A DNA stretch of 64,000 nt from the IMG/VR virus record IMGVR_UViG_3300042484_002457, positions 145,544-209,543 of that record. One strand, 5' to 3'. Positions 17,662 through 63,298 of the stretch are shown piece after piece. A model generated the notes under the pieces. It was given only the letters and a program-made list of their open reading frames with translations, was not told the DNA's origin and did no database searches. The position numbers were made by a program, and so were the translations under genes. Each line of letters starts with the position of its first letter. Within the stretch, counting starts at the first letter, position 1.

Positions 17662-17665
17662 TGGA

Positions 17666-17693
17666 TATTTATAGGCATACATTTTGCTAAATA
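17666..17693. promoter_or_regulatory. divergent pair of T4-like late promoters
   Basis: TATAAATA on minus strand (17673-17666) and TAAATA on plus strand (17688-17693). Confidence 0.6.
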
Positions 17694-35698: not shown

Positions 35699-36551
35699 AG
35701 ATAACTGGATTGAGATGTCCTGGGACGGATTGCCTGCTAGACAAGGTCCTGAGAACCTGTCAGTCAATATCAATCGCAAGGCCAAAGAGCTTTTGCCCTT
35801 TGACACTGCTTGCAGTCGCGTAGCAGAAGAAATATATAGCACACATAAAAATTTATACATTGCCATGAGTGGCGGCAGTGACAGTGAAAACGTTGCCAAC
35901 ACGTTTTTACGCATGGGTATTCCGTTTACCCCAATCATGATAACATACGATGTAACTCGCCACAATGATCAAAAATTAGAAATGTGGTGGGCGCAACAAT
36001 GGTGCAAAAAACACAACATAGAACCTCTTGTAGTTGATGTGGGTAATTATGCCAACAGTAAAACAGAAAAACAATATACTTCAATTGTTAAACCGCGACT
36101 TGGCAATGGCACAGTAACTCATGGACTAATCTTAGACACTGTACAACAACTAAACGGGCATATAGTATCTGGTTTCCAACTTGAATACTATCCTGACCAC
36201 GAACAGATGGAATACCTAACACCAGTGCTGGGAAACTACAATGGCTTTGTAATGGAAGAAGCTGACCTCTATGTAGAAACCTTGGTGCCAAATCAACATC
36301 CCTGGGCGTTTTATTATTGGAACGCCGAAGTCATGGCCAGTTTTGTGTCAGAGTGGGATACTAATCTTACTATGCAGGAAAACAAAGCCAAAATTTACGG
36401 CACTGTGCATAGACCAAAATTTGTTTACCATCAAGATGTGTTTGAACCAACCATTAAAAAAATTCGAGACCGATGTAAACAGCATTGGGGAACCAGAGAT
36501 TGTGCATTGTTGGGCTCTAGAGAACAACTACTTGCACAATTACTTGGGTAA
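35688..36551 (+). CDS. PP-loop (N-type ATP pyrophosphatase) family protein
   Basis: IAMSGGSDSENVA; lacks QueC C-terminal zinc cysteines. Confidence 0.65.
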   Translation: MLCKDNWIEMSWDGLPARQGPENLSVNINRKAKELLPFDTACSRVAEEIYSTHKNLYIAMSGGSDSENVANTFLRMGIPFTPIMITYDVTRHNDQKLEMWWAQQWCKKHNIEPLVVDVGNYANSKTEKQYTSIVKPRLGNGTVTHGLILDTVQQLNGHIVSGFQLEYYPDHEQMEYLTPVLGNYNGFVMEEADLYVETLVPNQHPWAFYYWNAEVMASFVSEWDTNLTMQENKAKIYGTVHRPKFVYHQDVFEPTIKKIRDRCKQHWGTRDCALLGSREQLLAQLLG

Positions 36552-40943: not shown

Positions 40944-41789
40944 ATGAAATTAAAAGTAAGTGAACTATTTTATTCTGCACAAGGCGAAGGCCGCTATGTA
41001 GGCGTTCCTTCAATTTTCCTCCGCACATTTGGTTGTAACTTCACCTGTTCAGGCTTTGGTTGTAAGCCTGGAGAAAAAAGCACAGGTGCTGACGAAGTTG
41101 CCAAGACTGTGCATTTATACAAGACTTTTGAAGAACTGCCATTAGTAGATACTGGCTGCGACAGCTATGCTAGTTGGCATCCAGACTTCAAACATCTAAG
41201 CCCCACATACACTCCTGAAGAACTTGTGGAAAAGATGGCAGCATTGTTGCCTAACAATAACTGGCAACAACCCAACGGCAACCCTGTACACTTGGTTATC
41301 ACTGGTGGCGAGCCATTGCTGGGCTGGCAGCGAGCATATCCTGAGTTGTTGGACCTGTTGCACGAACGTGGTTTGCGACACATTACATTTGAAACCAATG
41401 GTACTCAAGAACTCACACGTGACTTCAAACAGTATCTGGCAAACTGGCACGGTGAGATCACATTCTCAGTAAGCCCCAAGCTGAGTGTATCAGGTGAGAC
41501 TTGGGCAGATGCAATCAAGCCAGATATTGTATGGGATTACGAAACACATGGCATCACTTACTTGAAGTTTGTGGTAGACAAGATTGAAGACTTCGACGAG
41601 CTGGATCGTGCTGTGGATGAGTATCGACTGCGTGGTTTCAGTGGCCCCGTGTTCGTGATGCCAGTGGGCGGTGTGGTTAGCGTATATGACAGCAATAGAA
41701 TTCATGTTGCAGACGAAGCACTCAAACGCGGTTACTGGTATACCCCAAGATTGCATGTGGATCTTTGGGGCAATGGCTGGGGGAAATAA
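40944..41789 (+). CDS. queE: 7-carboxy-7-deazaguanine synthase (radical SAM)
   Basis: ELFYSAQGEG, FLRTFGCNFTC..., VITGGEPL, FETNGT, SVSPKL, LKFVV, PRLHVDLWG; long insert before third Cys. Confidence 0.9.
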   Translation: MKLKVSELFYSAQGEGRYVGVPSIFLRTFGCNFTCSGFGCKPGEKSTGADEVAKTVHLYKTFEELPLVDTGCDSYASWHPDFKHLSPTYTPEELVEKMAALLPNNNWQQPNGNPVHLVITGGEPLLGWQRAYPELLDLLHERGLRHITFETNGTQELTRDFKQYLANWHGEITFSVSPKLSVSGETWADAIKPDIVWDYETHGITYLKFVVDKIEDFDELDRAVDEYRLRGFSGPVFVMPVGGVVSVYDSNRIHVADEALKRGYWYTPRLHVDLWGNGWGK

Positions 41790-46959: not shown

Positions 46960-47243
46960 GTCGTCCCAAACCACAAGTGCTGATTGAGCACACAAACAAA
47001 CAAACCTACAAGACCGAGCAAGTGCTGGCATCTGAGGGAGTGTGGGCGGTGTTCTACGACTCAAAACCCATCAATCTCAAAACATCTAATTTGTTGACGC
47101 AGTACCCGGGACCCAAATACAAGAAGGTTTCGTTCTCAAATAAGGGACACGCAATCAACCTAGCCCGAAAACTCAATGCCCAGTTCAAGACAGATAAGTT
47201 TACGGTTGTTCTAATGACTGCTGGAACCCAGATATTTCCTTGA
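46956..47243 (+). CDS. hypothetical protein
   Basis: 95 aa, GTG start coupled to endonuclease stop. Confidence 0.7.
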   Translation: MSRPKPQVLIEHTNKQTYKTEQVLASEGVWAVFYDSKPINLKTSNLLTQYPGPKYKKVSFSNKGHAINLARKLNAQFKTDKFTVVLMTAGTQIFP

Positions 47244-47955
47244 GTTTACAGTTATTACCGTGCCATCTAGCAAACATAGCAACGGTAGTTTCTCTTCCGC
47301 AATGCTCGCAAGTTTTTCTAGGATGAACTATTCCAAGTTTTGATTGTCGCATCTTTTCTTTTGTTTCGTTGGATCTCTTTAGATTTAGGCCTAACAATGT
47401 TGCCGACGTTTTTTCTTTTGTTAGTTGATTAGGGATTCGAAGTTTCCCTACTTCAGACAGTCGTTCTCTAGTCTGTTTAGAGTGTGTCTTGCCCTTCATT
47501 GGACTGGTCCTACCTTTAAAATTTTCTATATGTTCTTCTGTATAAGACCACTTTCGTCTAGATTCTGACATCTTCTTTCGTGTTTTTTCTGTATGCTTCT
47601 TACCAAAAAAACTATTGTTTGATCCGCGGGTCGTTTCACTTAGATATTGTGCTCGCTCACGCTTTATCAGAGCATATATTTTGGAGTTGATGCAGCGTCC
47701 TTTATGATCGTTAGCAAGTCGCAGTGCTGCATTTACCATTTTTGCCTTATCTTGTCCTTCGGTCATTTTGGTCAAAAGCATATGACAAATAAAGTGTTCT
47801 CTAGGGGTTAGCCTAGCAATATTTTGTAATAGGTTTGTGCCGCCTAGCGATTTAGGAATGATGTGATGGCGCTCAAATCCTTCTGTAAGGTGTCTAGATT
47901 TTGCGTTCTCTATTATGAGATTATACCATTTGGAATATTTGTTAATTAAATACAT
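47200..47955 (-). CDS. HNH homing endonuclease with NUMOD3 repeats
   Basis: NKYSKWY...ERHHIIPKSLGG...LTPREHFICH; FFGKKHTEKT, MKGKTHSKQT; C-terminal CEHC; TATAAATA on minus strand 47984-47977. Confidence 0.85.
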   Translation of the reverse strand: MYLINKYSKWYNLIIENAKSRHLTEGFERHHIIPKSLGGTNLLQNIARLTPREHFICHMLLTKMTEGQDKAKMVNAALRLANDHKGRCINSKIYALIKRERAQYLSETTRGSNNSFFGKKHTEKTRKKMSESRRKWSYTEEHIENFKGRTSPMKGKTHSKQTRERLSEVGKLRIPNQLTKEKTSATLLGLNLKRSNETKEKMRQSKLGIVHPRKTCEHCGRETTVAMFARWHGNNCKLKEISGFQQSLEQP

Positions 47956-47987
47956 ACGAGGTTCCTTAAACATACTTATTTATACAA

Positions 47988-51644: not shown

Positions 51645-51673
51645 TTGACCAACTAAGAAAGTTATCGTATAAT
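51645..51673 (+). promoter_or_regulatory. sigma70-type promoter for tRNA pair
   Basis: TTGACC-17-TATAAT. Confidence 0.75.
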
Positions 51674-51766: not shown

Positions 51767-51841
51767 CTGGCGTTCGTATAATGGATAATACAGGGGATTT
51801 CTACTCCCTAAATAGCGGTTCGATTCCGTTACGCTGGACCA
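51767..51841 (+). tRNA. tRNA-Arg(TCT)
   Basis: CTGGCGT/ACGCTGG, GGGGA-TTTCTAC-TCCCT, GGTTCGATTCC, CCA. Confidence 0.9.
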
Positions 51842-51854: not shown

Positions 51855-52412
51855 ATGAATAGCAGTACTGATCGTCGCACTTTTCAGCTCAAGTCTTACA
51901 TCCAACGATGCAAGGACGATGGCAAAGAACCACAGGAAGAATATATGAAACTGTATCAAGACGAGGCTGACCGCGCCCGGGAAAATGAAGCCAGCGAGGA
52001 GTGGAAAAAATACAATCTAGAACACGACCTGCGTAGTACTAGTTGGATCTGCGACAAAGTCAAGTCACGCGAAGAGTATGCTCAAAACATCTATGCTGCC
52101 TTGTGCAACAACAAATTTGTGAAAAATGATGTTTGGCCCTTGCTCCAGGAACAACGCTGGTCATGCTCGTGGCGCTATGCCGGGGGCATTGTGGCTGACA
52201 TGCTCGAACAAGGTGATTACATTGACTGGTACTGTTCGGGCATCCGCGGCAGCGTCACACAAGAAGATTTCAAGGACATGACCCCTGAACAAATTGAAAA
52301 ACATCAGTGGATGAACAAGCATTTTGTGGGAGAAAGCTATGTTACTGATGAAGTACAAGAAGATCTGTTCAAGCTGGGCTGGATAGTAGTGGACAAGGAC
52401 CAAGACCATTGA
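51855..52412 (+). CDS. hypothetical protein
   Basis: 185 aa; YAQNIYAALCNN, WSCSWRYAGG, DYIDWYCSG. Confidence 0.75.
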   Translation: MNSSTDRRTFQLKSYIQRCKDDGKEPQEEYMKLYQDEADRARENEASEEWKKYNLEHDLRSTSWICDKVKSREEYAQNIYAALCNNKFVKNDVWPLLQEQRWSCSWRYAGGIVADMLEQGDYIDWYCSGIRGSVTQEDFKDMTPEQIEKHQWMNKHFVGESYVTDEVQEDLFKLGWIVVDKDQDH

Positions 52413-53686
52413 CTTATACTCTCAACGACAAAGATCGGTATGGCTACTACACTGTAGGCAACCAAAAAACCTACAGCAAGTTAGAAGCCATTGAATTTTA
52501 CGGCCAAAGCCGGCAGCCTATTCAGTGGCATTACAATACCCAAGTGTATGGCCAATTCAACTGGGGCCAGGACCCCCCGGGCAATTTAGAATTTTGGTAC
52601 CGTGCTAGAGCTGAACAGATTCGCAACGACTATGACTATATTGTGTTGTGGTATTCTGGCGGTGCTGACTCGTCCAATATACTCAATACTTTTGTAAAAA
52701 ACAATATCTTTGTTGATGAAATTGCGCAGTATACCACAGTAGATGGTACTCAAAACAAGCAAGATTACCTCAATGGCGAAATATATGCTACTGCTATACC
52801 ACAGACACAGACACTGTTAGAAAACAATCCGTTGTACAAAAACACAGTGCACAGAGTCATCGACATAACTGACCTCAATGCAAAGTTAATGACTGTAAGC
52901 GACAATCGATGGGACTTTTTCTATCACGTCAATCAATACTACTCATTCAGTGCGTTGAGTCGCAGTTACATAAGAGAAACTGTGTCTGCGTATCGTGAAT
53001 TGATCGAATCGGGCAAAAAAGTTTGTTTTGTATGGGGAGTGGAAAAACCTGATGTGTTCCAACAAAATAATCAATATTATTTACGTTTTGGCGATGGGCA
53101 GGATCATGCCGTAACTGCTCTTGCTCAGCAGCTGAATCGACCAGGAGAATACGATGAATTTTTTTATTGGGCACCAGACATGCCCGCATTACCGGCAAAA
53201 CAAGCTCATATCATATGCAGGTACTTAAACAATCTTACTGCCACAGATGTTGATGGTATTCATGTGCTAGATAATCACGGATACGAGGATACAGTTTACG
53301 GCACCACTTGCCCTGATCCTTATCTAACCAAGCCTTTGATCAAAATCACTAGATCAGGTCGTCCCTATGCTCTAAGCATGCGAGGCTTGCACAGGCTGAT
53401 ATATCCCGACTGGAATCCTAATTTAATTGTTGCCGGCAAACCTCATGGCCATATGTTTGCTCTTAAAGATACCTGGTTGCTTTGCAACTCGGCACCTGAT
53501 TGTGGACAACGATACTACACCAATGGGGTACCGGCACTGCGACAAAAAGTAAAACAAATTGACCCTAATCTTTGGCGGGAATACAAATTTGATCCCAAGC
53601 GAGCTCCATATATCGGCGGGGTGCATCGTTTTTACAATAACTATTGCTTGGGCAACGTAACAGCATTTGATCATGATAAAAATTGA
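52409..53686 (+). CDS. PP-loop family protein (paralog 1)
   Basis: GYYTVG, W.YN..VY, RAEQIRNDYDYIVLWYSGGADS, VDEI, EFFYWAP; TTG start. Confidence 0.7.
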   Translation: MTYTLNDKDRYGYYTVGNQKTYSKLEAIEFYGQSRQPIQWHYNTQVYGQFNWGQDPPGNLEFWYRARAEQIRNDYDYIVLWYSGGADSSNILNTFVKNNIFVDEIAQYTTVDGTQNKQDYLNGEIYATAIPQTQTLLENNPLYKNTVHRVIDITDLNAKLMTVSDNRWDFFYHVNQYYSFSALSRSYIRETVSAYRELIESGKKVCFVWGVEKPDVFQQNNQYYLRFGDGQDHAVTALAQQLNRPGEYDEFFYWAPDMPALPAKQAHIICRYLNNLTATDVDGIHVLDNHGYEDTVYGTTCPDPYLTKPLIKITRSGRPYALSMRGLHRLIYPDWNPNLIVAGKPHGHMFALKDTWLLCNSAPDCGQRYYTNGVPALRQKVKQIDPNLWREYKFDPKRAPYIGGVHRFYNNYCLGNVTAFDHDKN

Positions 53687-54857
53687 AAACAACCCCAAAT
53701 TGGGATTTTACACAGTAGGCCAAGAGAAATTTTTCAGCAAGCCCATGGCCTTGATGGAAGCGACAAAAACCAACCAGTTTCCCAAATGGAACTTTAATGA
53801 CGAAGTGTTTGGCACAATTAACTGGCACGATGAGCCTTCCCCTCATATAAATGAGCTATATCGTATTAGAGCACAACAGTTGCGCAACAAGTACGATTAT
53901 ATTCGTTTAGAGTTTAGTGGTGGCTCAGACTCAACTACTGTGTTGTACAGTTTTGTAAATAACAACATTCACATTGATGAAGTGGTTTTTCGTTATCCCA
54001 AGACTGGTGAAAAAAATGTCAACGATGACCCGTTCAACTACAAATGCGAGAACACTTTAAGTGAGGCAAAGTACGCGGCATTTCCAATTCTGAATTGGTT
54101 AACAACAGCTTCTCCACGTACTAAGATTACGTTGCATGACTATAGCGAAGACATGCTCAATAGTTCTTACGATGAATCTTGGGTATATCGTTCTAAAGAT
54201 TATTTTCAGCCCGGACACAGTTTCAAGCATTCTAAAATAGGGCACCATGATCACAAATTGCAAGCAGACTCAGGACGTAATATTTGTATCTTATATGGAG
54301 TAGACAAACCTAAAATTTGTATCAAGGATAGCAAGTGGTATGCGTACTTCATTGACATTATTGCCAATCACTCAGTAACTGATGCTGGAGAGTACAGCAA
54401 TCTTACTACTGAGTATTTTTATTGGAGTCCGGACTTGCCCGAAATGCTTGTAAAACAAGCCCACGTGCTCCGACGTTGGTTTGATCTCCCAGAGAATCGA
54501 ATGTTGCAGTATGTTTGCAGATGGCCCAACTACAGTTACACTCATCGCAATGCGTATGAATCTATTTTGAAACCGTTGATTTATCCTGACTACGATCCTG
54601 CTACGTTTCAAACCAACAAGGCCTCAAACAGTTTTTACAATGAAATGGATTTTTGGTTTTACCAAAACTTCAAAGAAACTCAGCAGTTTAAGATTTGGCG
54701 TGCTGGACTTGACCACCTAATAAATAGCATTGATCCCAAATATTTCAACTACGAAATGAAACAACCTGTGGGCTTTGTGGGATTTATCAGCCCATTCTAT
54801 TATCTTGGTGATGCTAGTTACACAGACACTGGCATCAACTCACACTTTAAATTCTAA
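53673..54857 (+). CDS. PP-loop family protein (paralog 2)
   Basis: GFYTVG, RAQQLRNKYDYIRLEFSGGSDS, IDEV, EYFYWSP. Confidence 0.7.
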   Translation: MIKIENNPKLGFYTVGQEKFFSKPMALMEATKTNQFPKWNFNDEVFGTINWHDEPSPHINELYRIRAQQLRNKYDYIRLEFSGGSDSTTVLYSFVNNNIHIDEVVFRYPKTGEKNVNDDPFNYKCENTLSEAKYAAFPILNWLTTASPRTKITLHDYSEDMLNSSYDESWVYRSKDYFQPGHSFKHSKIGHHDHKLQADSGRNICILYGVDKPKICIKDSKWYAYFIDIIANHSVTDAGEYSNLTTEYFYWSPDLPEMLVKQAHVLRRWFDLPENRMLQYVCRWPNYSYTHRNAYESILKPLIYPDYDPATFQTNKASNSFYNEMDFWFYQNFKETQQFKIWRAGLDHLINSIDPKYFNYEMKQPVGFVGFISPFYYLGDASYTDTGINSHFKF

Positions 54858-54864
54858 GGACCAT

Positions 54865-55773
54865 ATGAAAAAACTTTTAACTATATTATTATTGACATTG
54901 TCGTTGACTGCACACAGTCGAGAAAACGTTACAATTGCTTATAGTTGGGCCGCAAGCGATCCTGCCGCAAACTTTGATCGTGCGATCATCAACGAAGCCA
55001 ACCGTATTCAAGATCGATTTACATTTATTTTTGAAGCAAAGCCAGGCGCTGGTGGCACAGTTGCCGCAAACTTTGCGTTAACTAATGCAAACACAGTACT
55101 AGCAACCAGTTCTGCATTTTTTATTCGTCCCAATTTTTATCCAAACGACAGTCACGACGTTGGTGCCTTTAGAGAGATTATGCCCAAGTGTGTGGTCCCT
55201 GCATTGATCACCAGTGTAAAATACAATCGTTGGCAAGATGTTCCGCATGATCGTTACTTGACCATTGGAGTGAGTGGCTTGGGCACTACTACTCATTTGA
55301 TTGCTGAACAGTTGCGGTTAAAGTACCCAGATATACAAGTAATTCCATTCAAGAGCACTAGCGAAAGTTTAGTAAATATGCTCGCAGGACAAATTGATTT
55401 GTCAGTTAATTTTATTGGTGACGTTGAAAGTTGGGCTCGAGAAAATCACACAAAGAAAACTGTAAATCTATTAGGTGTAACTGGTACACAAACATTTGAA
55501 AATGTTCCTACTTTAATTAGTCAGGGGTTTAGTCCTAACTTGGCGTTTATGAGCCCGCCGCACCAGTACTTGGTTTCTGCCCGCATAGATCAAGGGCGTT
55601 TTCAAGAATTGCGTAGCATTCTTGCAAAGGCTGCAGATACTCCAAGAGTACGTGCGGCTTATTACATTGATCGTTGCCAACCTATAACTATCAAGGATAC
55701 CCAACTAGACCAATACTACCAAGATCAAATTATCAAGTGGAAAAAATTTAGTGCTGGAGTTAAAATTAATTAA
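54865..55773 (+). CDS. Bug/TctC-family periplasmic solute-binding protein
   Basis: Signal peptide MKKLLTILLLTLSLTAHS; KPGAGGTVAA, GVSGLGTTTHL, IPFKS...MLAGQID. Confidence 0.8.
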   Translation: MKKLLTILLLTLSLTAHSRENVTIAYSWAASDPAANFDRAIINEANRIQDRFTFIFEAKPGAGGTVAANFALTNANTVLATSSAFFIRPNFYPNDSHDVGAFREIMPKCVVPALITSVKYNRWQDVPHDRYLTIGVSGLGTTTHLIAEQLRLKYPDIQVIPFKSTSESLVNMLAGQIDLSVNFIGDVESWARENHTKKTVNLLGVTGTQTFENVPTLISQGFSPNLAFMSPPHQYLVSARIDQGRFQELRSILAKAADTPRVRAAYYIDRCQPITIKDTQLDQYYQDQIIKWKKFSAGVKIN

Positions 55774-55782
55774 GGAATCGTT

Positions 55783-56370
55783 ATGCAACCTTGGACTTAT
55801 ATTGTTTTAAAAGATTTCCCGCTGCCGCCTCGCGATCTACTAGAGCAAATTGATCTATCGCTTACTCCCGAAGTAAACAACACAGGCTATTTGCAAACCG
55901 AACCACTGATCAACTGGAATGGATATTCTGGTCCAGCGGCTCTGAATGTACGTGTATTGTTTAATAACGACTATACTGAATGGTTGAAAAAACATGTTAC
56001 TACTGAATTTGAAAATGCAAGTTTAAATTATGTTACAGGGCCGCCACAAATAAAAACCACAGCACCGCATCGAGATTTTACTCGAGACTACGTGTTAATC
56101 TACAATGTAGATACCGGGGGCGATGATGTTAAATTACAATTTTGGAGGGAAACTGGACACGAAGTTGTTCGCGAGCCCGGTGCGGCTTGCGGGCGCAGAG
56201 CTGATCTTGAACTGTTAGATACGGTATCGGGTCCACCAAATTGCTGGTATCTAACAAATGCTACTATTTTACACAGTACTGATAATATGGTTAGACAGCG
56301 TGTAAATTTACAAGTTAGTTTTAAGCAAGGCAACAAATTTGTAGAAAATATTATAAATCAGCATAAATAA
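55783..56370 (+). CDS. 2OG-Fe(II) oxygenase-like protein
   Basis: APHRD...HS..N..R (HxD...H) in beta-rich context. Confidence 0.5.
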   Translation: MQPWTYIVLKDFPLPPRDLLEQIDLSLTPEVNNTGYLQTEPLINWNGYSGPAALNVRVLFNNDYTEWLKKHVTTEFENASLNYVTGPPQIKTTAPHRDFTRDYVLIYNVDTGGDDVKLQFWRETGHEVVREPGAACGRRADLELLDTVSGPPNCWYLTNATILHSTDNMVRQRVNLQVSFKQGNKFVENIINQHK

Positions 56371-56375
56371 CAATA

Positions 56376-56461
56376 GCAACGCCAGCAGATGCTGACGTCG
56401 GATTATAAGGACGCATGGGATTGTCCCTTTACTAGATGTCATCTAGAACGCCCACCGTAGC
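56376..56461 (+). promoter_or_regulatory. structured 5' leader of dctP-like gene
   Basis: After ATAAATA; GCAACG/CGTAGC closing stem with CAGCA/TGCTG, GGGA/TCCC, CTAGAT/ATCTAG hairpins. Confidence 0.45.
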
Positions 56462-56497
56462 AGACAACTGCAAGCAAAACTCACACAAGGAAAAAAC

Positions 56498-57448
56498 ATG
56501 CAACCTAAATTAGTAAAATGGGTTTTGGCGCACGAGCCCATTGATATTTTTATCAAAGCCGCCGAAAAATTTACCGAAGTCATTGACAAGTTGGCCCCAG
56601 GTCAACTCAAAATAGAAGTTATGACTCTGAGCGAGTACGCAAATCGATACAACAACGGCAAAAAAATTACCAAGCACGATTTATTGCAATTAATGGAAGA
56701 CGATCTCATTGAGATGAGCCAGACATACAGTTATGTGTTAGGTAACAAATACGCACCTGACATGCATGTTGTAGACATGCCTTTTTTATTTCGTGACCAT
56801 GATCATGCTGCCAACGTATTTGAGGGCAAAATTGGTGCTAAGTTGTTAGACAGCTACGGTCATAATAGCAACTTACAAGGTTTAGCGTTTACATATTCGG
56901 GCGGTTTTAGAAATATTCCGTTTAGCAAAAATGTTGCAACACTAAACGACTTGGCCGGAGCTCGTGTGCGGGTGACTTCCAATCCAATTTGCGAAGCAAT
57001 TTTTGAAAGTATTGGTGCTACTCCGGTTACGTTTGATATTGAAGATTTGGCTGATCGCATGGAAGATGGAACTGTAGAAGGCGGCGAAAGCTCGTGGCCA
57101 CGCATTTATGCTTGCCGTCAAAACGAAGTAAGTAATGTAATTTTTGACACCGAACACAATCTGTTGACCACTAATATCATTGCCAACAAACAATGGATGC
57201 AAGGCTTGCCGGTTGAGTTACAAGCCAAAATTAAACAAGCCGCAATTGAAGCGGCACGCCATGAGCGTGACATTAGTGTTGCAGATGTCGAGCGTGTGGG
57301 ATCTCTTGCTCGTGCTGATGGCATTCGTGTTATCAAGTTTTCTGAAGAAGATCAAACTCACTTTAAGAAAGCAACAGAATCAGTTTACACCAAGTTTGAA
57401 GACTACTTTACACCAGGGTTGGTTGACAGCATTCGCACTTTACAGTAA
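56498..57448 (+). CDS. dctP: TRAP transporter DctP-family solute-binding protein, no signal peptide
   Basis: DMPFLFRD..HA, GFRNI, DLAGARVRV, VEGGES, H.L..NII.ANK.W..LP. Confidence 0.85.
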   Translation: MQPKLVKWVLAHEPIDIFIKAAEKFTEVIDKLAPGQLKIEVMTLSEYANRYNNGKKITKHDLLQLMEDDLIEMSQTYSYVLGNKYAPDMHVVDMPFLFRDHDHAANVFEGKIGAKLLDSYGHNSNLQGLAFTYSGGFRNIPFSKNVATLNDLAGARVRVTSNPICEAIFESIGATPVTFDIEDLADRMEDGTVEGGESSWPRIYACRQNEVSNVIFDTEHNLLTTNIIANKQWMQGLPVELQAKIKQAAIEAARHERDISVADVERVGSLARADGIRVIKFSEEDQTHFKKATESVYTKFEDYFTPGLVDSIRTLQ

Positions 57449-57467
57449 ACTACAGTTTATTGCTGTA

Positions 57468-57725
57468 TGAAGCAAAGAGAAAAGGATCCAAGACCCGGGG
57501 GCAGTTCCCGGCATCTCCACCTAAGTGTATGTTGTATATTTAGGTGGGGATGACATAGATATCGATTGGGTCAAGAGTAACAGAGTGGACAGCTCGGCAA
57601 TGTGAAAGCCGTAGGATTGGGGTCTCCCGGTCGTAGAAGCAAAAAACGTAAATGCAAACGACGAACAGTTCGCTTTAGCCGCCTAAACTCGGCTTAGGGT
57701 AGGAAATACCTCGTAACAGAAACCC
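57468..57725 (+). ncRNA. ssrA: circularly permuted (two-piece) tmRNA, tag ANDEQFALAA
   Basis: T-arm and acceptor 3' strand CATCTCC-ACC (57512-57521) precede 5' strand GGGGATG (57546-57552) with G3.U70; intervening hairpin; resume GCA 57654 to TAA 57686; 5' boundary approximate. Confidence 0.9.
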
Positions 57726-57727
57726 CC

Positions 57728-57755
57728 AAAAAGGGGCTTGGCCCCTTTTTCTTTT
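57728..57755 (+). terminator. intrinsic (bidirectional) terminator
   Basis: AAAAAGGGGC-TTG-GCCCCTTTTT. Confidence 0.85.
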
Positions 57756-57801
57756 TACACCTCTAGTAGAAATAAGTATGTGCCTGTATAGAAATCATCA
57801 A

Positions 57802-58683
57802 ATGAAAAAAATATTATTATCTTTGTTGGCAACGATTTGTGTGTCAGCATCTGCTGACACTGTTCCAACAGATTTTTCAGTCATTGCTCGACTACCAACC
57901 GGAGTATTACCCACACTGTGCCGCAGTGTTTTTGCGGCATACGCTCGGGAATACAAGAGCAACGTCAACATTGTTATCAAGCCCGGAGCTGATGGCATTT
58001 TGGCAGTAGAAGATGTGACGTCGTCGGATAAATTTACTGTGCTCTGTGCTTCATCAACTGAGCTGGTTTTTAACTTTTTTGAATACCCCCAACATGTAAA
58101 GATACACAGCGACCTACAACCGACAAATATTTTATCCACAACCATAGTGTCTTTTACATCTAGTCCCACAAGCAAGTATCAAAATCTAGTTGAATTGATT
58201 GCTGACAAAAAATCTATCACTGTGGGCTTTGCTGGCAGTGCTCACGGGTTCATTGCTAAAAAAATGTTCAACGAAAAACAACTGGTGCTAGTTCCTTTTA
58301 AAGCAGCACAACAGGCAATTCCGTCATTGCTAGACGGAACTCTTGATGTGTATCTGTCTGGCGGCGCATTTGAAGAACTGCACCGAGATGGCAAGCTTAA
58401 ACCAATGGGACATCTGCATGGTCGACCAACATCATTGGGTCCAGCACTGGATCAACATTTTTCCGAGGCATTAAAATTTCCTTCATTTGTTGCTCTGGCA
58501 ATTAGCAAAAAAACATCACCAGATGTTGCAAGAGAATTTAGCCGGCGCATTGCATTGATCATGAAAACACCCGAAGTACAACAAACAATTCAAGATCTCA
58601 ATGGTAACTATACGCCCAACACCCTACAACAGGCCACTGTGTTTGTAGAAAAAATAAAAACTGACGCTAAGAAAAGTTATTGA
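57802..58683 (+). CDS. Bug/TctC-family periplasmic solute-binding protein
   Basis: Signal peptide MKKILLSLLATICVSASA; KPGADGILA, GFAGSAH, VPFKAA...LLDGTLD. Confidence 0.75.
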   Translation: MKKILLSLLATICVSASADTVPTDFSVIARLPTGVLPTLCRSVFAAYAREYKSNVNIVIKPGADGILAVEDVTSSDKFTVLCASSTELVFNFFEYPQHVKIHSDLQPTNILSTTIVSFTSSPTSKYQNLVELIADKKSITVGFAGSAHGFIAKKMFNEKQLVLVPFKAAQQAIPSLLDGTLDVYLSGGAFEELHRDGKLKPMGHLHGRPTSLGPALDQHFSEALKFPSFVALAISKKTSPDVAREFSRRIALIMKTPEVQQTIQDLNGNYTPNTLQQATVFVEKIKTDAKKSY

Positions 58684-59822
58684 TGTTTGATTTTCAAAAT
58701 TTCGAAGACGGACCAAGGCCTACCCGACACGGATTTTACTGTGTAGGGGACAAAAAATTTTACTACAAAGCAAGTGCGTTAGTACATGCATCAACACAAA
58801 AATTGCCAGTGACCTGGGAGTTCAACAATGATGTATTTGCTGAGCAGGTGGCCAAACCAAGGTTGCCAATATCACTGCCAGAGCTGTATCGATTGCGATG
58901 CCAGCAAATAAGAGATCAGTATGACTATGTTATATTGGCCTACAGTGGAGGTGCCGACAGCAATACTATACTCCGGTCATTCCTTGACAACAACGTCAGA
59001 CTGGATGAAGTTTGGTTCGATCAACCGTTTGAGTTTATTGAAAAAAGCAACTATACTCCTACATTATCAACTGATCCTAGAAATCTAGTCAGTGAGTGGT
59101 TTTTTGTTGTCAAGCCAGACTTTGAACAACTGCAAGTATCAAATCCAGAAATAAAAATACACGTATCAGACGCATGTAAAGATCCCAGCATCGAAGACTA
59201 CGAAGATACTTTTCAGCATACATTTGCTTATACCTACAATGGCATCAAACGTTGGAGGTACATGAAAAATTACATTGAAAAATTACAAGAGCGCCACAAG
59301 AAAGTATGTGTTATTTTAGGAACTGACAAGTGCATTACTTTTTATCACCAAGGCAGCTATGGATTTTCTTTTAAGGACAGTCCCACAAATATCAAACACT
59401 CGTTTATTGAATATTTTTACTGGACACCTAGCATGCCAGAAATTGCAGTTCAGCAGGCCTACGAAGTTTGGGATCAGCTGCAACACAATACCAAGTTACT
59501 GGTACAAAAAAAGATGAGTCTCAAAAAAGACCCCAATGATTATATCCGTCGAGATCAGTACGATCAATTTATCAAATCAGTAATCTATCCAACCTGGGAC
59601 CCGAACAGACATCAAGTCGACAAGATGACAATATTTTTAGGCAAAGGCTTCAGTGTATTTGTTGATCGATGGTCGCAAGAACGTTTCTATCAAAGTTGGG
59701 CCAGCAACGTTCAACATACTTTTAAATCCATAGATCCTGCGATGTACACAAACGGGCGAGATCCAACAGATGATTTTAAATCGTTTGCGGTGAACTACAC
59801 GCTTGGTAAAAATTCCACATAA
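58683..59822 (+). CDS. PP-loop family protein (paralog 3)
   Basis: GFYCVG, RCQQIRDQYDYVILAYSGGADS, LDEV, EYFYWTP. Confidence 0.7.
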   Translation: MFDFQNFEDGPRPTRHGFYCVGDKKFYYKASALVHASTQKLPVTWEFNNDVFAEQVAKPRLPISLPELYRLRCQQIRDQYDYVILAYSGGADSNTILRSFLDNNVRLDEVWFDQPFEFIEKSNYTPTLSTDPRNLVSEWFFVVKPDFEQLQVSNPEIKIHVSDACKDPSIEDYEDTFQHTFAYTYNGIKRWRYMKNYIEKLQERHKKVCVILGTDKCITFYHQGSYGFSFKDSPTNIKHSFIEYFYWTPSMPEIAVQQAYEVWDQLQHNTKLLVQKKMSLKKDPNDYIRRDQYDQFIKSVIYPTWDPNRHQVDKMTIFLGKGFSVFVDRWSQERFYQSWASNVQHTFKSIDPAMYTNGRDPTDDFKSFAVNYTLGKNST

Positions 59823-59910: not shown

Positions 59911-60792
59911 ATGAAGAAAATTATAATTACAGCCGCTTTGTTGGCTACTTGCGCCCTGGCTTCTGCTCAGACCACTATGTACGGTCGTGTCAACGCCACT
60001 GTTGACAGCACTAAAACTGGTGCTATTCGTGCAGACAGCATTGTCAATGACATCAGTCACATTGGCTTCAGCGTCAAAGAAGACCTCGGAGGCGGATTGT
60101 CAGCTCGTGCTGTGATCGAAACCTCTGTGGCCACCCAAGACCCCACCACTGGTGGCAACACTCAATTGGGCAACCGCCAAAGCACAGTTGGCTTGGCCAG
60201 CAAGTTAGGCAGCATTGATGTTGGCCGCAACGTGCATGGTTTGTTTACCACAGCTGGACAAGGCGACGCTTTTGGTGCATTGTATGGCAGCATCGCTGGA
60301 GATGTTCATGACCTGCGTGGTCTGCGACTCAGCAACGGCGTGTTCGCTCGTGTCAACGGCCCATTGGGTACTACCTTGGGTGCTGATCGTACCTACACCG
60401 CTGCAGGCACAGAAACCACTGTTTACAGTGCAACTGGCAAATTAGGCCCTGTCAACGCTGGCGTGGCTCAATTTGAGCAAGGTGCCGAGAAATCAACTGT
60501 GGTCAGTGCCAGCACCAAGCTTGGCAACACTGGCGTGTTCTACAGCTACAGTGACAACCAAGGTGCTGTTGCTGCCAGAGGCAACCTAGTGGGCGTGAGC
60601 CAGAAAGTCGGTGCTTACACTGTGAAAGCTAGCTACGGTGATACCAACACAGCCGTCAAGGCTTACAACGTTGGCGCTGAGTATGCTCTCAGCAAGCGCA
60701 CTGACGTATTGGTCAGCTATCGCAACGTTGACAAGACTGGCACTGCCAATGACATCAAGCAAGTTGGCGTAGGTGTTACACATCGCTTCTGA
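59911..60792 (+). CDS. Gram-negative (betaproteobacterial-type) outer-membrane porin
   Basis: Signal peptide; TMYGRV, SHIGFSVKEDLGGGLSA, YALSKRT, C-terminal VGVTHRF. Confidence 0.9.
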   Translation: MKKIIITAALLATCALASAQTTMYGRVNATVDSTKTGAIRADSIVNDISHIGFSVKEDLGGGLSARAVIETSVATQDPTTGGNTQLGNRQSTVGLASKLGSIDVGRNVHGLFTTAGQGDAFGALYGSIAGDVHDLRGLRLSNGVFARVNGPLGTTLGADRTYTAAGTETTVYSATGKLGPVNAGVAQFEQGAEKSTVVSASTKLGNTGVFYSYSDNQGAVAARGNLVGVSQKVGAYTVKASYGDTNTAVKAYNVGAEYALSKRTDVLVSYRNVDKTGTANDIKQVGVGVTHRF

Positions 60793-60967: not shown

Positions 60968-60999
60968 ACTAGTATTACTTTAGTATTACATCAACAAAG

Positions 61000-61028
61000 A
61001 CCCTGCAACTAGCAGGGTTTTCCTTTTT
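61000..61028 (+). terminator. intrinsic terminator
   Basis: ACCCTGC-AACTA-GCAGGGT then T-rich run. Confidence 0.8.
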
Positions 61029-61341: not shown

Positions 61342-61426
61342 GCTCGAGTGGTGAAATCGGTAGACACAAGAGACTTAAAATCTCTCGCTGCAAGGTGTGC
61401 CGGTTCGATTCCGGCCTCGAGCACCA
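61342..61426 (+). tRNA. tRNA-Leu(TAA)
   Basis: GCTCGAG/CTCGAGC, AGAGA-CTTAAAA-TCTCT, long V arm, CCA. Confidence 0.95.
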
Positions 61427-61431
61427 AACAT

Positions 61432-61508
61432 GCCCTGGTGACGGAATTGGTATACGTGTTGGTCTTAGAAGCCAAATTTTGGGAGTTCGAGTCTCCCCTG
61501 GGGCACCA
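61432..61508 (+). tRNA. tRNA-Leu(TAG), short variable loop
   Basis: GCCCTGG/CTGGGGC, TTGGT-CTTAGAA-GCCAA, V loop ATTTT, CCA. Confidence 0.9.
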
Positions 61509-61517
61509 AGATACTAA

Positions 61518-61723
61518 GATGATACTTAGTAAGATGAGTAGATGGAAACCGACCCGGGAGAGACTTCCCGGGCTTCAGCAGCATCTGAGGTGGCTGACGA
61601 ACGATAGGCAAAGTCGGTCCAGTAGGGGTAAGAAAAGTATCATCAGCGGAAAGAGCTGCTGGAGGACAGAAGTTTGGGCACATCCTCGGAGGGGGTGGTT
61701 AGTCTTAACGCCGTGTAATCCTC
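61518..61723 (+). ncRNA. candidate structured ncRNA within tRNA cluster
   Basis: GATGATACTT/AAGTATCATC, ACCGAC/GTCGGT, CCCGGGA/TCCCGGG helices. Confidence 0.5.
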
Positions 61724-61734
61724 TAAGAATTTAT

Positions 61735-61809
61735 ACTGGGTTCGTCTATCGGTTAGGACAGCTGGTTTTCAACCAGCCAAGACGGGTTCGATTCCCGTAC
61801 CCAGTACCA
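61735..61809 (+). tRNA. tRNA-Glu(TTC)
   Basis: ACTGGGT/ACCCAGT, GCTGG-TTTTCAA-CCAGC, CCA. Confidence 0.9.
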
Positions 61810-61873
61810 AGTTTATGAGTTCGTCTAGAAACCGGTAAATTGTAGTTTGGTCTACAAGCTCGTAATTAATTTT

Positions 61874-61948
61874 GCCATAGTAGTCCTCGGGGAGGGCAAC
61901 GGATTGTCTATCCGTACCAGGTGGGTTCGAGTCCCATCTATGGCGCCA
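61874..61948 (+). tRNA. tRNA-Asp(GTC)
   Basis: GCCATAG/CTATGGC, ACGGA-TTGTCTA-TCCGT, G73, CCA. Confidence 0.9.
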
Positions 61949-61954
61949 ATATAT

Positions 61955-61994
61955 TCGAACTCTGCTAAATACTATGGTATTAGATGGAGTTCGA
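61955..61994 (+). promoter_or_regulatory. SD-sequestering hairpin with late promoter in the loop
   Basis: TCGAACTC 61955-61962 / GAGTTCGA 61987-61994 covers GGAG; TAAATA 61966-61971. Confidence 0.75.
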
Positions 61995-61995
61995 T

Positions 61996-62472
61996 ATGAA
62001 AAAAGTTTGTCCCAAATGCGGCACATTACATGAAAAGAATGGTAATTTTTGCTCAAGAAGTTGTGCAAATTCCAGGTCCTGGACTGTTGATGCAAAGCAG
62101 AAAAAAAGTAAAGCATTGAAGAAATTCATTGCAGAAAACCCAATCTGGGAGGAGCAGCGCCTTGCTGCTATGCCCAAAATGATTGAAAATTTGAAACAAA
62201 CTTTGCTTGAAAAAAACAACCTTAGGTTTTCTGAAGGAAAAATAACAAGCAGAGAAGCCATTAAGAAACAACTAATTGCATTACACGGAGAAATCTGTAG
62301 CGTATGCAGTCTTAGTGCTCATTGGCATGGGCACTTCTTATCGTTGCATGTTGATCATGTTGATGGTAATAGTAAAAATAATATGCCAGATAACGTTAGA
62401 CTACTGTGCCCAAATTGTCATAGTCAGACTGATACGTATGCTGGAAAGAAGCATAGAAAGATTAAGATCTAA
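61996..62472 (+). CDS. HNH endonuclease inserted in tRNA cluster
   Basis: CPKC...FCSRSCAN; CSVC...LHVDHVDGN..NN...NVRLLCPNCH. Confidence 0.9.
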   Translation: MKKVCPKCGTLHEKNGNFCSRSCANSRSWTVDAKQKKSKALKKFIAENPIWEEQRLAAMPKMIENLKQTLLEKNNLRFSEGKITSREAIKKQLIALHGEICSVCSLSAHWHGHFLSLHVDHVDGNSKNNMPDNVRLLCPNCHSQTDTYAGKKHRKIKI

Positions 62473-62562
62473 ATTAGATCCACCAGTTTTATAGGAGAGT
62501 CGCTGCGAAGCGAATTCTTAAACGACCCGTAGAACTCCCGGGCGTCCTGTAGTTAGTATTTT

Positions 62563-62648
62563 GGAGTCGTAGGAAAATTGGTAACCCCAGTGGACTGTAA
62601 ATCCGCCGCCCTAGTGCATTGCTGGTTCAACTCCAGCCGGCTCCACCA
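62563..62648 (+). tRNA. tRNA-Tyr(GTA)
   Basis: GGAGTCG/CGGCTCC, GTGGA-CTGTAAA-TCCGC, long V arm, CCA. Confidence 0.95.
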
Positions 62649-62653
62649 ATTTA

Positions 62654-62729
62654 GGTCTTAAAGTGTTCATGGACGCACGATGGCTTGTCACGCCATAAGA
62701 GTGGGGATCGTTACCCCCTAAGACCGCCA
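62654..62729 (+). tRNA. tRNA-Asp(GTC), second copy
   Basis: GGTCTTA/TAAGACC, ATGGC-TTGTCAC-GCCAT, T-loop ATCGTTA, CCA. Confidence 0.9.
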
Positions 62730-62732
62730 AGT

Positions 62733-62942
62733 TTTGAAAGTGTCAGCAAGTGAAGTCACGTTATGCAGTATTCTTCGAAGGTACTGAGTAATAGAAGGCA
62801 AGCGGGTTCGACTCCCGACCGATCGGAAGATCGGTGTAGCATGGTTACCACGCTGGATGAATCCCAAGTGACGTACCGAACCCCGTCCGGACTTGTTAAA
62901 TCGGGTGAATGGTGCCTATAACAGGGTGGCACTACTTTCAAA
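62733..62942 (+). ncRNA. candidate ~210 nt structured RNA with a T-arm-like element
   Basis: TTTGAAAGT/ACTTTCAAA closing stem, GTCAC/GTGAC, CAGTA/TACTG, CGGG-TTCGACT-CCCG, CCGATC-GGAA-GATCGG. Confidence 0.55.
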
Positions 62943-62951
62943 TTCAACAAT

Positions 62952-63029
62952 GGGCTGTGACTGTGTAAATGGCTAACAGCAACCAGTAACTCTGGTTGGT
63001 CAGCGGTTCGACTCCGCTACAGTCCACCA
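62952..63029 (+). tRNA. non-canonical tRNA: Ala-type acceptor (G3.U70) with AAC anticodon
   Basis: GGGCTGT/ACAGTCC-ACCA; AACCA-GTAACTC-TGGTT; AGCGG-TTCGACT-CCGCT. Confidence 0.75.
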
Positions 63030-63035
63030 ATTTTT

Positions 63036-63110
63036 GTCGCATTAGACTTCTGGTGAGGTCATCACCCTTTCAAGGTGACCAGACGGGATCGTAACCCGTA
63101 TGCGACTCCA
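63036..63110 (+). tRNA. tRNA-Glu(TTC), second copy
   Basis: GTCGCAT/ATGCGAC, TCACC-CTTTCAA-GGTGA, T-loop ATCGTAA, U73, CCA. Confidence 0.9.
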
Positions 63111-63196
63111 TTGATAAACACACTCACAGATCCGCCCGAGTAGTAAGGGAGACAGCGACTAACCGTTGAAGGACTGTTTAAAAGTGTGTTTTTCAA
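63111..63196 (+). ncRNA. candidate small multibranch RNA
   Basis: AAACACACT/AGTGTGTTT closing stem, ACAG/CTGT, TCC/GGA, CCC/GGG, CAGCG/CGTTG. Confidence 0.45.
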
Positions 63197-63197
63197 T

Positions 63198-63298
63198 GGG
63201 AGTGTTGCTAATACTGGCCTAAGGGCGAGATTTATATCCTCGTAAGCACCGTCTAGATAAGGCGGCGAATGTGGGTTCAATTCCCACCACTCCTACCA
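63198..63298 (+). tRNA. non-canonical tRNA with TAT (Ile) anticodon and long variable arm
   Basis: GGGAGTG/CACTCCT-ACCA; CGAG-ATTTATATC-CTCG; V arm CCGTCT/AGGCGG; GTGGG-TTCAATT-CCCAC. Confidence 0.75.

What the first reader, a model, noticed from the sequence alone, without database searches (positions are those of the whole stretch)
52409..59822. Module of three paralogous PP-loop enzymes interleaved with orphan solute-binding proteins
Seen: three 380-425 aa proteins sharing G(F/Y)YxVG, RxxQ(I/L)RxxYDY, SGGxDS, DE(I/V), E(Y/F)FYWxP; two are directly coupled to Bug/TctC genes (53673-54865; 57802-58683), with a 2OG-Fe(II) oxygenase-like gene and DctP between; no TctAB or DctQM membrane genes in the window. 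Inference: an uncharacterised uptake-plus-adenylation/amide-ligation system for a carboxylate metabolite, repeated as enzyme/receptor pairs; function unknown to me.
Basis: partly seen in the sequence, partly recalled or inferred. Interest (0 to 1): 0.7.

Follow-up and report, generated by a model that had tools for sequence, protein, structure and literature searches.

The report
Phage carboxylate-uptake and amide-ligase gene module
A lake-water jumbo phage carries three copies of an unnamed, virus-only enzyme related to asparagine synthetase, wired next to genes for nutrient-binding proteins and a porin. This gene pairing recurs in dozens of related uncultured phages and points to an unstudied way for phages to import and chemically trap an organic acid.

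Summary
Three paralogues (425, 396 and 380 aa; pairwise E 1e-31 to 9e-44) share all five motifs, including the PP-loop SGGxDS. One coordinate pair is wrong: 53673-54865 is paralogue B, and the first TctC gene is 54865-55773.

Linkage to binding proteins is real. In 73 dereplicated family clusters, 50 have a TctC- or DctP-like gene within 500 bp. In five near-complete 317-357 kb relatives, 11 of 14 such genes lie within 3.3 kb of a family member. Four other phage lineages place the TctA permease in the same module.

New points:
- The DctP-like protein never has a signal peptide, so it is cytoplasmic, and no DctM exists in the relatives.
- A betaproteobacterial-type two-piece tmRNA gene sits inside the module.
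- The record is only about 58% complete.

Best reading: uptake of an unknown carboxylate through the porin, TctC and TctA, then ATP-dependent adenylation and amide formation. The substrate is unknown and nothing has been tested biochemically.

The parts
51645..51673 (+). promoter-like site (TTGACC-17-TATAAT) upstream of tRNA-Arg and the first operon
   Evidence: Consensus scan, 11 of 12 matches. A pattern match only.
51767..51841 (+). tRNA-Arg(TCT), directly upstream of the module
   Evidence: ARAGORN; Rfam tRNA 52.6 bits.
51855..52412 (+). orf185: conserved virus-only protein of unknown function. Its stop overlaps the PPa start (ATTGA).
   Evidence: Homologues lie within 6 kb of a family gene in 14 of 56 representative loci. 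Model pLDDT 88.6 with no PDB match and only unnamed AFDB matches. Junction read.
52409..53686 (+). PPa: paralogue A of the glutaminase-less AsnB-like PP-loop family (425 aa, TTG start)
   Evidence: Orthologues of 48-88% identity.
53673..54857 (+). PPb: paralogue B (ORF opens at TTG 53667; likely ATG 53673, overlapping the PPa end by 14 nt)
54865..55773 (+). TctC1: Bug/TctC-family periplasmic solute-binding protein with signal peptide (MKKLLTILLLTLSLTAHS)
   Evidence: Pfam PF03401 44.3 bits. PDB 7ndr E 8.5e-11. AAGGA ribosome-binding site 7 nt upstream. Signal peptides in all orthologues.
55783..56370 (+). orf195: 2OG-Fe(II) oxygenase-like protein (HxD...H...R conserved)
   Evidence: Conserved H96, D98, H164, R173 in 16 homologues. 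The Atlas structural neighbours of a relative's model are 2OG oxygenases, TM 0.61-0.66. No Pfam hit.
56498..57448 (+). DctP-like protein without signal peptide (cytoplasmic SBP fold)
   Evidence: Pfam PF03480 166 bits. PDB 4o94 E 1.4e-26, with the carboxylate-binding Arg position aligned. No signal peptide in this gene or in about 50 orthologues.
57410..57752 (+). two-piece (permuted) tmRNA gene of betaproteobacterial type; tag frame reads ANDEQFALAA
   Evidence: Rfam RF01850 109.9 bits (gathering score 84) and RF04321 115.7 bits. Fold z-score -4.4.
57802..58683 (+). TctC2: second, divergent TctC-family binding protein with signal peptide (MKKILLSLLATICVSASA)
   Evidence: Pfam 39.5 bits. PDB 7ndr E 2.8e-8.
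58680..59822 (+). PPc: paralogue C (380 aa). Its start overlaps the TctC2 stop.
   Evidence: The closest relatives elsewhere are only 40-45% identical.
59911..60792 (+). Porin_4-family outer-membrane porin with signal peptide
   Evidence: Pfam PF13609 99.2 bits. 65-95% identical copies lie beside the module in relatives.
60997..61021 (+). terminator-like hairpin after the porin gene; the tRNA array follows
   Evidence: Consensus scan; tRNAs.

Best explanation
This is an auxiliary module of an uncultured freshwater jumbo phage, probably of a betaproteobacterial host. It imports an organic acid and converts it inside the cell.

Proposed route:
1. The phage porin lets the solute through the outer membrane.
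2. The two secreted TctC-type proteins bind it in the periplasm.
3. They hand it to a TctA(B) permease. The host supplies this here; some relatives encode their own.
4. In the cytoplasm, three paralogous enzymes adenylate a carboxylate with ATP. They have an asparagine-synthetase-B-type synthetase domain but no glutaminase domain.
5. The acyl-adenylate is resolved with free ammonia or an amine to give an amide. This traps or transforms the imported compound.
6. The signal-less DctP-like protein would hold the carboxylate in the cytoplasm, and the 2OG-Fe(II) oxygenase-like protein would modify it.

Shown: the paralogy, the folds, the signal peptides or their absence, and the gene linkage.
Inferred: the chemistry, the direction of flow, the role of the DctP-like protein and the identity of the substrate.
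For: Enzyme fold:
- PP-loop motif SGGxDS, and 10 invariant plus 26 near-invariant residues across 76 diverse members, all kept in the three paralogues.
- No glutaminase domain. The N-terminal 60 residues align colinearly with the tail of the AsnB Ntn domain.

Linkage:
- 50 of 73 family clusters (70% identity) have a TctC- or DctP-like gene within 500 bp, 53 of 61 within 3 kb, and 38 of 40 within 6 kb.
- TctC is the commonest neighbour family (42 of 56 loci), then DctP (24 of 56). The next family is at 14.
- The link holds in relatives below 45% identity, and gene order varies.
- In five near-complete genomes, 11 of 14 TctC/DctP genes lie within 3.3 kb of a family gene. Chance expectation is about 6%, binomial p about 1e-11.

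Transport context:
- TctA genes are adjacent in L049, L020, L150 and L135.
- Porin_4 genes sit beside the module here and in L001, L010, L067 and L150.
- TctC proteins always carry signal peptides.
- Genes are translationally coupled, with stop/start overlaps or 8-10 nt gaps.
Against: - No substrate is identified and no biochemistry exists.
- The Pfam Asn_synthase model does not hit the family. HHalign to E. coli AsnB is not significant (probability about 2%), so the AsnB relationship rests on predicted structure alone.
- The complex prediction for PPb with the DctP-like protein gave no answer.
- The module also lies in the phage's tRNA/tmRNA region: 28 of 61 clusters have such a gene within 3 kb. 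Part of the co-location could reflect a plastic accessory island.
- The loci sampled are related phages, so the counts are not fully independent.
- No RNA run was listed.
Confidence: 0.5

Rival explanations
1. Translation-support island, a specific version of the main reading. The TctC proteins import aspartate or glutamate, as the Bug-family receptors BugD and BugE bind them. The AsnB-like enzymes are ammonia-dependent asparagine or glutamine-type synthetases. They feed phage translation alongside the adjacent tRNA array and tmRNA.
For: - AsnB and human ASNS are the top structural matches.
- BugD is among the PDB sequence matches of TctC1.
- The module is flanked by tRNA-Arg, contains a tmRNA gene and precedes a tRNA array.
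- 24 of 40 clusters have a tRNA or tmRNA gene within 6 kb.
Against: - Three to four deep paralogues per phage, with co-diverging receptors, argue for several different substrates rather than one amino acid.
- The best PDB matches of the TctC proteins are a 'tripartite tricarboxylate transporter substrate binding protein' (7ndr) and terephthalate-binding proteins, not BugD.
- One relative (G001) also carries a canonical AsnB with a glutaminase domain near the module.
Confidence: 0.15
2. The PP-loop proteins are RNA (tRNA or tmRNA) modification enzymes of the TilS, MnmA or TtcA kind. They sit next to binding-protein genes only because both lie in a hyperplastic accessory region.
For: - tRNA or tmRNA genes lie within 6 kb of a family gene in 37 of 56 representative loci.
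- MnmA, TilS and TtcA appear among the weaker fold matches.
Against: - No RNA-binding domain was recognised, and no Cys is conserved across the family for an Fe-S cluster or Zn site.
- Binding-protein genes are much closer than tRNA genes: 50 of 73 against 9 of 73 within 500 bp.
- TctA also joins the module.
Confidence: 0.1
3. Envelope remodelling or superinfection exclusion. The porin and secreted binding proteins replace or block host surface and periplasmic components. The AsnB-like enzymes amidate envelope precursors, as AsnB/LtsA-type enzymes amidate peptidoglycan diaminopimelate (recalled from the literature, not tested here).
For: - A phage porin and secreted proteins sit in one block.
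- The enzymes have an AsnB-superfamily fold.
Against: - It does not explain the cytoplasmic DctP-like protein.
- It does not explain the TctA permease and MFS transporter genes in relatives' modules.
- It does not explain the enzyme/receptor co-divergence.
Confidence: 0.08
4. The PP-loop proteins are non-catalytic or regulatory ATP-binding partners of the transporter. The precedent is the universal-stress protein TeaD, encoded with the TeaABC TRAP transporter.
For: - USP-type proteins share the same nucleotide-binding fold class.
Against: - The full SGGxDS PP-loop and a set of invariant acidic and basic residues are conserved across about 1,700 clusters.
- The proteins are about 400 aa with an AsnB-like C-terminal subdomain, which is far more than a USP domain.
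Confidence: 0.05

Closest known systems
Asparagine synthetase B superfamily synthetase domains (AsnB/ASNS, beta-lactam synthetase, carbapenam synthetase, TsnB9)
   Same: - PP-loop SGGxDS.
- A colinear vestige of the last strands and helix of the N-terminal domain.
- Expected chemistry: carboxylate adenylation, then attack by nitrogen.
   Different: - No Ntn glutaminase domain and no N-terminal Cys.
- Not recognised by Pfam PF00733 or by NCBIfam.
- About 10% sequence identity.
- Found only in viruses (none found in two pattern-based scans of 185,579 prokaryote species genomes).
- Present as 2-3 paralogues per phage, next to TctC genes.
Tripartite tricarboxylate transporter (TctABC) and orphan Bug-family receptors of Burkholderiales
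   Same: - TctC1 and TctC2 pass the Pfam TctC threshold and carry signal peptides.
- They resemble solved TTT binding proteins.
- Orphan receptor genes without tctAB are typical of the family (PMC2864759).
   Different: - They are phage-encoded.
- They are systematically adjacent to a cytoplasmic adenylating enzyme rather than to tctAB or regulators.
- The N-terminal loop motif differs in the TctC1 clade: 'YSWxxxDxAANF' in place of the usual Bug-family loop (the usual motif is recalled from the literature, not tested here).
- Only some relatives carry tctA.
TRAP transporter binding subunit DctP
   Same: - Strong Pfam and NCBIfam DctP match.
- The conserved Arg position aligns with solved DctP proteins.
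   Different: - No signal peptide in any of about 50 phage orthologues.
- No DctM in five near-complete relatives.
- In one subclade the gene is split into two ORFs near residue 155.
Phage-encoded nutrient-uptake auxiliary genes (for example cyanophage PstS; tctA reported as a putative AMG in SUP05 viruses)
   Same: The phage encodes host-type transport components, presumably to raise nutrient supply during infection. tctA is listed as a viral AMG in PMC6359870. The PstS example is from general knowledge, not tested here.
   Different: Here receptor genes are tightly paired with a dedicated, unnamed enzyme family, and the block includes a porin and a cytoplasmic SBP-fold protein.
Vectorial acylation of fatty acids (FadL outer-membrane channel plus FadD adenylating acyl-CoA synthetase)
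   Same: An analogy in logic only, from general knowledge. An outer-membrane channel is combined with a cytoplasmic adenylating enzyme that traps the imported carboxylate.
   Different: Unrelated protein families. The predicted product here is an amide rather than a CoA thioester. Not tested.

Membership tests
PP-loop ATP pyrophosphatase (adenine nucleotide alpha-hydrolase) superfamily | SGGxDS motif following the first strand of a Rossmann-like sheet | tested here: met
   SGGADS, SGGSDS and SGGADS in PPa, PPb and PPc. S84 and G86 are invariant and G85, D88 and S89 are at least 90% conserved in 76 members. In the model a strand at 78-83 is followed by a helix at 87-97.
PP-loop ATP pyrophosphatase (adenine nucleotide alpha-hydrolase) superfamily | Fold similarity to solved PP-loop enzymes | tested here: met
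PP-loop ATP pyrophosphatase (adenine nucleotide alpha-hydrolase) superfamily | ATP to AMP + PPi turnover coupled to substrate adenylation | not testable with these tools
   Needs an enzyme assay.
Asparagine synthetase B family (Pfam PF00733 Asn_synthase) | Recognised by the family's sequence model | tested here: not met
   No Pfam hit at E 0.01 or better for any of the three. HHalign of the family profile against E. coli AsnB gives about 2% probability.
Asparagine synthetase B family (Pfam PF00733 Asn_synthase) | Synthetase-domain fold including the C-terminal helical subdomain | tested here: met
Asparagine synthetase B family (Pfam PF00733 Asn_synthase) | N-terminal Ntn glutaminase domain with catalytic Cys after the initiator Met | tested here: not met
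   The proteins begin about 80 residues before the PP-loop. The second residues are T, I and M. Only a short stretch aligns with the tail of the AsnB N-terminal domain.
Asparagine synthetase B family (Pfam PF00733 Asn_synthase) | Catalytic residues of the aspartyl-AMP site | tested here: inconclusive
   No reliable residue-level alignment could be obtained. The family has its own invariant set: Y65, R68, R73, D104, E133, D158, K214, D230, E249, K318.
QueC (7-cyano-7-deazaguanine synthase) | Family model hit, and a conserved Cys set for the zinc site (the zinc-site feature is recalled from the literature) | tested here: not met
   TIGR00364 gives 14 bits against a cut-off of 150. No Cys is conserved across the family. 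No TGT/DpdA in G000-G004.
TilS (tRNA-Ile lysidine synthetase) | Match beyond the PP-loop core into the TilS C-terminal domains | tested here: not met
TTT solute receptor (TctC/Bug, PF03401) | Family model above the gathering score, plus an export signal | tested here: met
   44.3 and 39.5 bits against a cut-off of 27. N-terminal signal peptides in both, and in all phage orthologues listed.
TTT solute receptor (TctC/Bug, PF03401) | A TctA(B) membrane partner encoded with it | tested here: not met
   No TctA in the 209.5-kb record, which is 58% complete. TctA is adjacent in four other phage lineages. A host partner cannot be checked.
TRAP transporter binding subunit (DctP, PF03480) | Family model above the gathering score, with the conserved carboxylate-binding Arg | tested here: met
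   166.4 bits. The Arg of 'RVRV' aligns with the 'KFRI' Arg of 4o94, and R158 is at least 90% conserved.
TRAP transporter binding subunit (DctP, PF03480) | Periplasmic location (signal peptide) and a DctQM partner | tested here: not met
   No signal peptide is possible in the frame, here or in about 50 orthologues. No DctM in the record or in five near-complete relatives.
2OG-Fe(II) oxygenase (orf195) | HxD...H iron triad and a distal Arg for 2-oxoglutarate | tested here: met
   H96, D98, H164 and R173 are conserved in at least 85% of 16 homologues.
2OG-Fe(II) oxygenase (orf195) | Family model hit or a direct fold match | tested here: inconclusive
   No Pfam hit. The model of a close relative resembles 2OG oxygenase clusters at TM 0.61-0.66. 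orf195 itself was not modelled.

The most novel reading that the evidence does not exclude
The module is a transporter-coupled 'capture and ligate' pathway not described before. A solute-binding-protein fold (the DctP-like protein) works inside the cytoplasm as a substrate holder. It serves a virus-only family of glutaminase-less AsnB-like ligases, and each ligase paralogue is matched to its own periplasmic TctC receptor. In this way the phage turns several environmental organic acids into amides, or into a phage-specific amide metabolite, during infection.
Probability: 0.2. Interest if true: 0.8.

Novelty: new variant of a known kind. Interest (0 to 1): 0.62.

Why it matters
If the reading is right, it would matter in four ways:
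- It shows that abundant freshwater jumbo phages carry not just single transport genes but a nearly complete route: porin, periplasmic receptors, sometimes the permease, a cytoplasmic binder and dedicated enzymes.
- It gives ligand-discovery targets for the poorly understood TTT/Bug receptor family.
- A signal-less, sometimes split, DctP-fold protein would be an unusual cytoplasmic use of a transporter component.

Tried and rejected
- Sequence libraries. Pfam, PHROGs and NCBIfam give nothing for the three enzymes beyond 12-14-bit touches of LarE and QueC at the PP-loop. PDB sequence search gives only chance hits.
- GenBank phage isolates. There is no relative of the enzymes or the porin. The DctP hits there are weak and look bacterial.
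- Prokaryote genomes. Two scans of 185,579 species genomes found no relative.
- Complex prediction of PPb with the DctP-like protein returned 'no answer', which is not evidence either way.
- orf185. The model is confident, but there is no PDB match and only unnamed AFDB relatives.
- HHalign to E. coli AsnB was colinear but not significant.
- Literature searches found no description of this pairing. They found only tctA listed as a putative viral AMG.
- RNA runs: none was listed.


Full report
**What the window is.** The window is the last 64 kb of a single 209,543-bp IMG/VR virus record. GC is 44.6%, the record is linear, and CheckV puts completeness at 58%. It carries a family-B DNA polymerase, a ClpB-like ATPase, several radical-SAM proteins, an HNH/NUMOD3 endonuclease and a tRNA cluster. 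Relatives are 317-357 kb jumbo phages. The same DNA is held by at least 24 lake-water metagenome runs.

**The observation.** The three ORFs are 52409-53686 (PPa, 425 aa), 53667/53673-54857 (PPb, 396 aa) and 58680-59822 (PPc, 380 aa).
- They are true paralogues: 26-31% identity, BLASTP E 1e-31 to 9e-44.
- A family HMM finds no other full copy in the record.
- Between and around them lie TctC1 (54865-55773), a 195-aa ORF (55783-56370), a DctP-like gene (56498-57448), TctC2 (57802-58683) and a Porin_4 gene (59911-60792).
- Genes are tightly packed. The orf185 stop overlaps the PPa start, PPa and PPb overlap by 14 nt, and the PPb stop lies 8 nt before the TctC1 ATG, which has an AAGGA site. The TctC2 stop overlaps the PPc start.

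**What the enzymes are.**
- No Pfam, PHROG or NCBIfam model recognises them.
- The family is large. An HMM search of 1.84 billion representatives finds 1,726 clusters at E 1e-3 or better, of which 735 are at 1e-30 or better.
- It is virus-only as far as can be seen. Atlas clusters are about 100% Uroviricota. BFVD relatives are all 'uncultured Caudovirales phage'. There is none in GenBank phage isolates and none in 185,579 prokaryote species genomes.
- An AlphaFold2 model of PPb built on 76 diverse members is confident: pLDDT 93.4, pTM 0.92.
- Foldseek gives weak matches led by carbapenam and beta-lactam synthetases.
- There is no glutaminase domain. The N-terminal 60 residues align colinearly with the tail of the AsnB N-terminal domain, 'GFYTVG..FSKPMAL' against 'GYDEHGQLYVASEMKAL', but not significantly.
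- The family keeps S84, G86, D104, E133, D158, K214, D230, E249 and K318 among others, and has no conserved Cys.
- By homology the chemistry is ATP-dependent adenylation of a carboxylate. Attack by ammonia or an amine, not by glutamine-derived ammonia, would follow. This step is inferred, not shown.

- After collapsing the enzymes at 70% identity into 74 clusters, 50 of 73 have a TctC- or DctP-like gene within 500 bp, 53 of 61 within 3 kb, and 38 of 40 within 6 kb.
- Among all neighbour families within 6 kb, TctC is first (42 of 56 loci) and DctP second (24 of 56). The next are orf185 (14) and radical-SAM, FA-desaturase, AhpC, CMD and PhoH families (6-10).
- Gene order varies (PP-TctC-DctP, PP-DctP-TctC, DctP-TctC-PP, TctC-PP), which argues against mere inherited synteny.
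- The TctC link holds for relatives below 45% identity: 14 of 16 and 12 of 15. The DctP-like link belongs mainly to the PPb clade (12 of 19) and is absent from PPc-like enzymes (0 of 16).
- In five near-complete relatives, 11 of 14 Pfam TctC/DctP hits lie within 3.3 kb of a family gene, where about 6% is expected. Binomial p is about 1e-11.
- Similarity among enzymes correlates with similarity among their adjacent receptors: Spearman 0.485, with 0.19 the maximum of 500 shuffles. This fits enzyme/receptor pairs, but it is not independent of phage phylogeny.

**Transport context.**
- TctA permease genes (PF01970; 102-317 bits) sit in the same block in four other lineages. These are L049 (PP-TctA-SBP-DctP-MFS-two methyltransferases-PP), L020 (PP-DctP-TctA), L150 (porin-TctA-SBP-PP) and L135.
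- No DctM was found in the record or in the five relatives.
- All TctC-like proteins have signal peptides.
- All roughly 50 distinct DctP-like proteins start 'MK..IRWVLAHEP' with no room for a signal peptide, so they are cytoplasmic.
- The DctP-like protein keeps the family's carboxylate-binding Arg position.
- In one subclade it is split into two ORFs near residue 155.
- Orphan Bug/TctC genes are normal in Burkholderiales (PMC2864759), so the lack of tctAB here is not odd, and the record is incomplete.

**Other parts.**
- orf195 conserves H96, D98, H164 and R173, and its relatives' models resemble 2OG-Fe(II) oxygenases.
- orf185 is conserved and often directly upstream, but it has no recognisable fold relative.
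- The 330-nt gap between the DctP-like gene and TctC2 is a two-piece tmRNA gene of betaproteobacterial type. Rfam RF01850 scores 109.9 bits against a gathering score of 84, and RF04321 scores 115.7 bits. The tag frame reads ANDEQFALAA. ARAGORN missed it here but finds permuted tmRNAs beside the module in many relatives.
- The tmRNA, the Porin_4 gene and the Bug-type receptors suggest a betaproteobacterial host. This is an inference.

**Rivals.**
- The module lies in the tRNA/tmRNA region in most relatives, so a translation-related or RNA-modifying role was considered. tRNA genes are much less tightly linked than binding-protein genes (9 of 73 against 50 of 73 within 500 bp). The fold evidence also favours AsnB-type over tRNA-modifying PP-loop enzymes.
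- A narrower version, uptake of Asp or Glu and synthesis of Asn or Gln for translation, remains possible.
- A deazaguanine role is not supported: no TGT/DpdA was found.
- A complex prediction for PPb with the DctP-like protein was uninformative.

**Verdict.** The main correction is that the DctP-like protein is cytoplasmic rather than an uptake receptor. The substrate is unknown. I rate this as a new variant of known kinds (AsnB-superfamily ligases and TTT transport auxiliary genes), with moderate to high interest because it is widespread, unannotated and directly testable.

Noticed in passing
window 57410-57752 (+): A two-piece (permuted) tmRNA gene of betaproteobacterial type fills the gap between the DctP-like gene and TctC2. 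The tag frame reads ANDEQFALAA. ARAGORN did not report it here. The model's last stem is the hairpin at 57728-57750 that looks like a terminator.
   Followed up: partly
L051, L054, L058-L061, L063, L068, L083, L084, L027/L065 (for example L061:12239-12709 and 12706-13194): In one subclade of related phages the signal-less DctP-like gene is split into two ORFs at about residue 153/156. The second ORF has its own start (MKIRTNRNP...) and often overlaps the first one's stop. It looks like a conserved split gene rather than a sequencing error.
   Followed up: partly
L049:11188-12486, L020:12322-13659, L150:1486-2823, L135:6376-7812: Phage-encoded TctA permease genes (Pfam PF01970 above the cut-off) lie inside the PP-loop/TctC/DctP module. 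In L150 the order is porin-TctA-SBP-PP.
   Followed up: yes
L049:14705-17430: One relative carries an MFS (Sugar_tr-type) transporter and two SAM-methyltransferase genes between its DctP-like gene and a second PP-loop gene.
   Followed up: partly
G000:C1:135693-136661 (outside the window, about 9.9 kb upstream of its start): A third TctC-like gene of the same phage record lies about 61 kb upstream of the module's first PP-loop gene (HMM E 1.5e-71).
   Followed up: no
window 35688-36551 (+): A 287-aa ORF gives a weak match to the PP-loop family HMM (E 1.8e-7) but has no Pfam hit. It may be a further, shorter PP-loop protein like the QueC-touching 306-aa family seen near the module in relatives (L129:8199-9119).
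   Followed up: partly
window 61342-63295 (+): The tRNA array (Leu, Leu, Glu, Asp, Tyr, Asp, Glu) runs to the end of the record. Rfam adds a tRNA at 63198-63295 that ARAGORN did not list, and a sub-threshold tmRNA touch at 62968-63029 (18.8 bits). All eight tRNA genes that ARAGORN finds in the 209.5-kb record lie in its last 12 kb.
   Followed up: no
window 37990-39990, 40944-41789, 16663-17682: Several radical-SAM proteins, one with a B12-binding domain. Radical-SAM/SPASM and B12-radical-SAM genes also recur within 6 kb of the module in about 10 of 56 relatives.
   Followed up: partly
window 47200-47973 (-): An HNH/NUMOD3 homing-endonuclease-like gene on the opposite strand, upstream of the module.
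   Followed up: no
G002:C1:116386-117543 (-): One PP-loop family copy in a complete 357-kb relative has an in-frame TAA. It is possibly a pseudogene. It lies far from the other copies, and the nearest TctC gene is 45 kb away.
   Followed up: no
window 102-2366, 23450-25906, 19343-22048: A ClpB-like double-AAA+ chaperone, a family-B DNA polymerase and a 901-aa LysM-domain protein, consistent with a jumbo phage.
   Followed up: no
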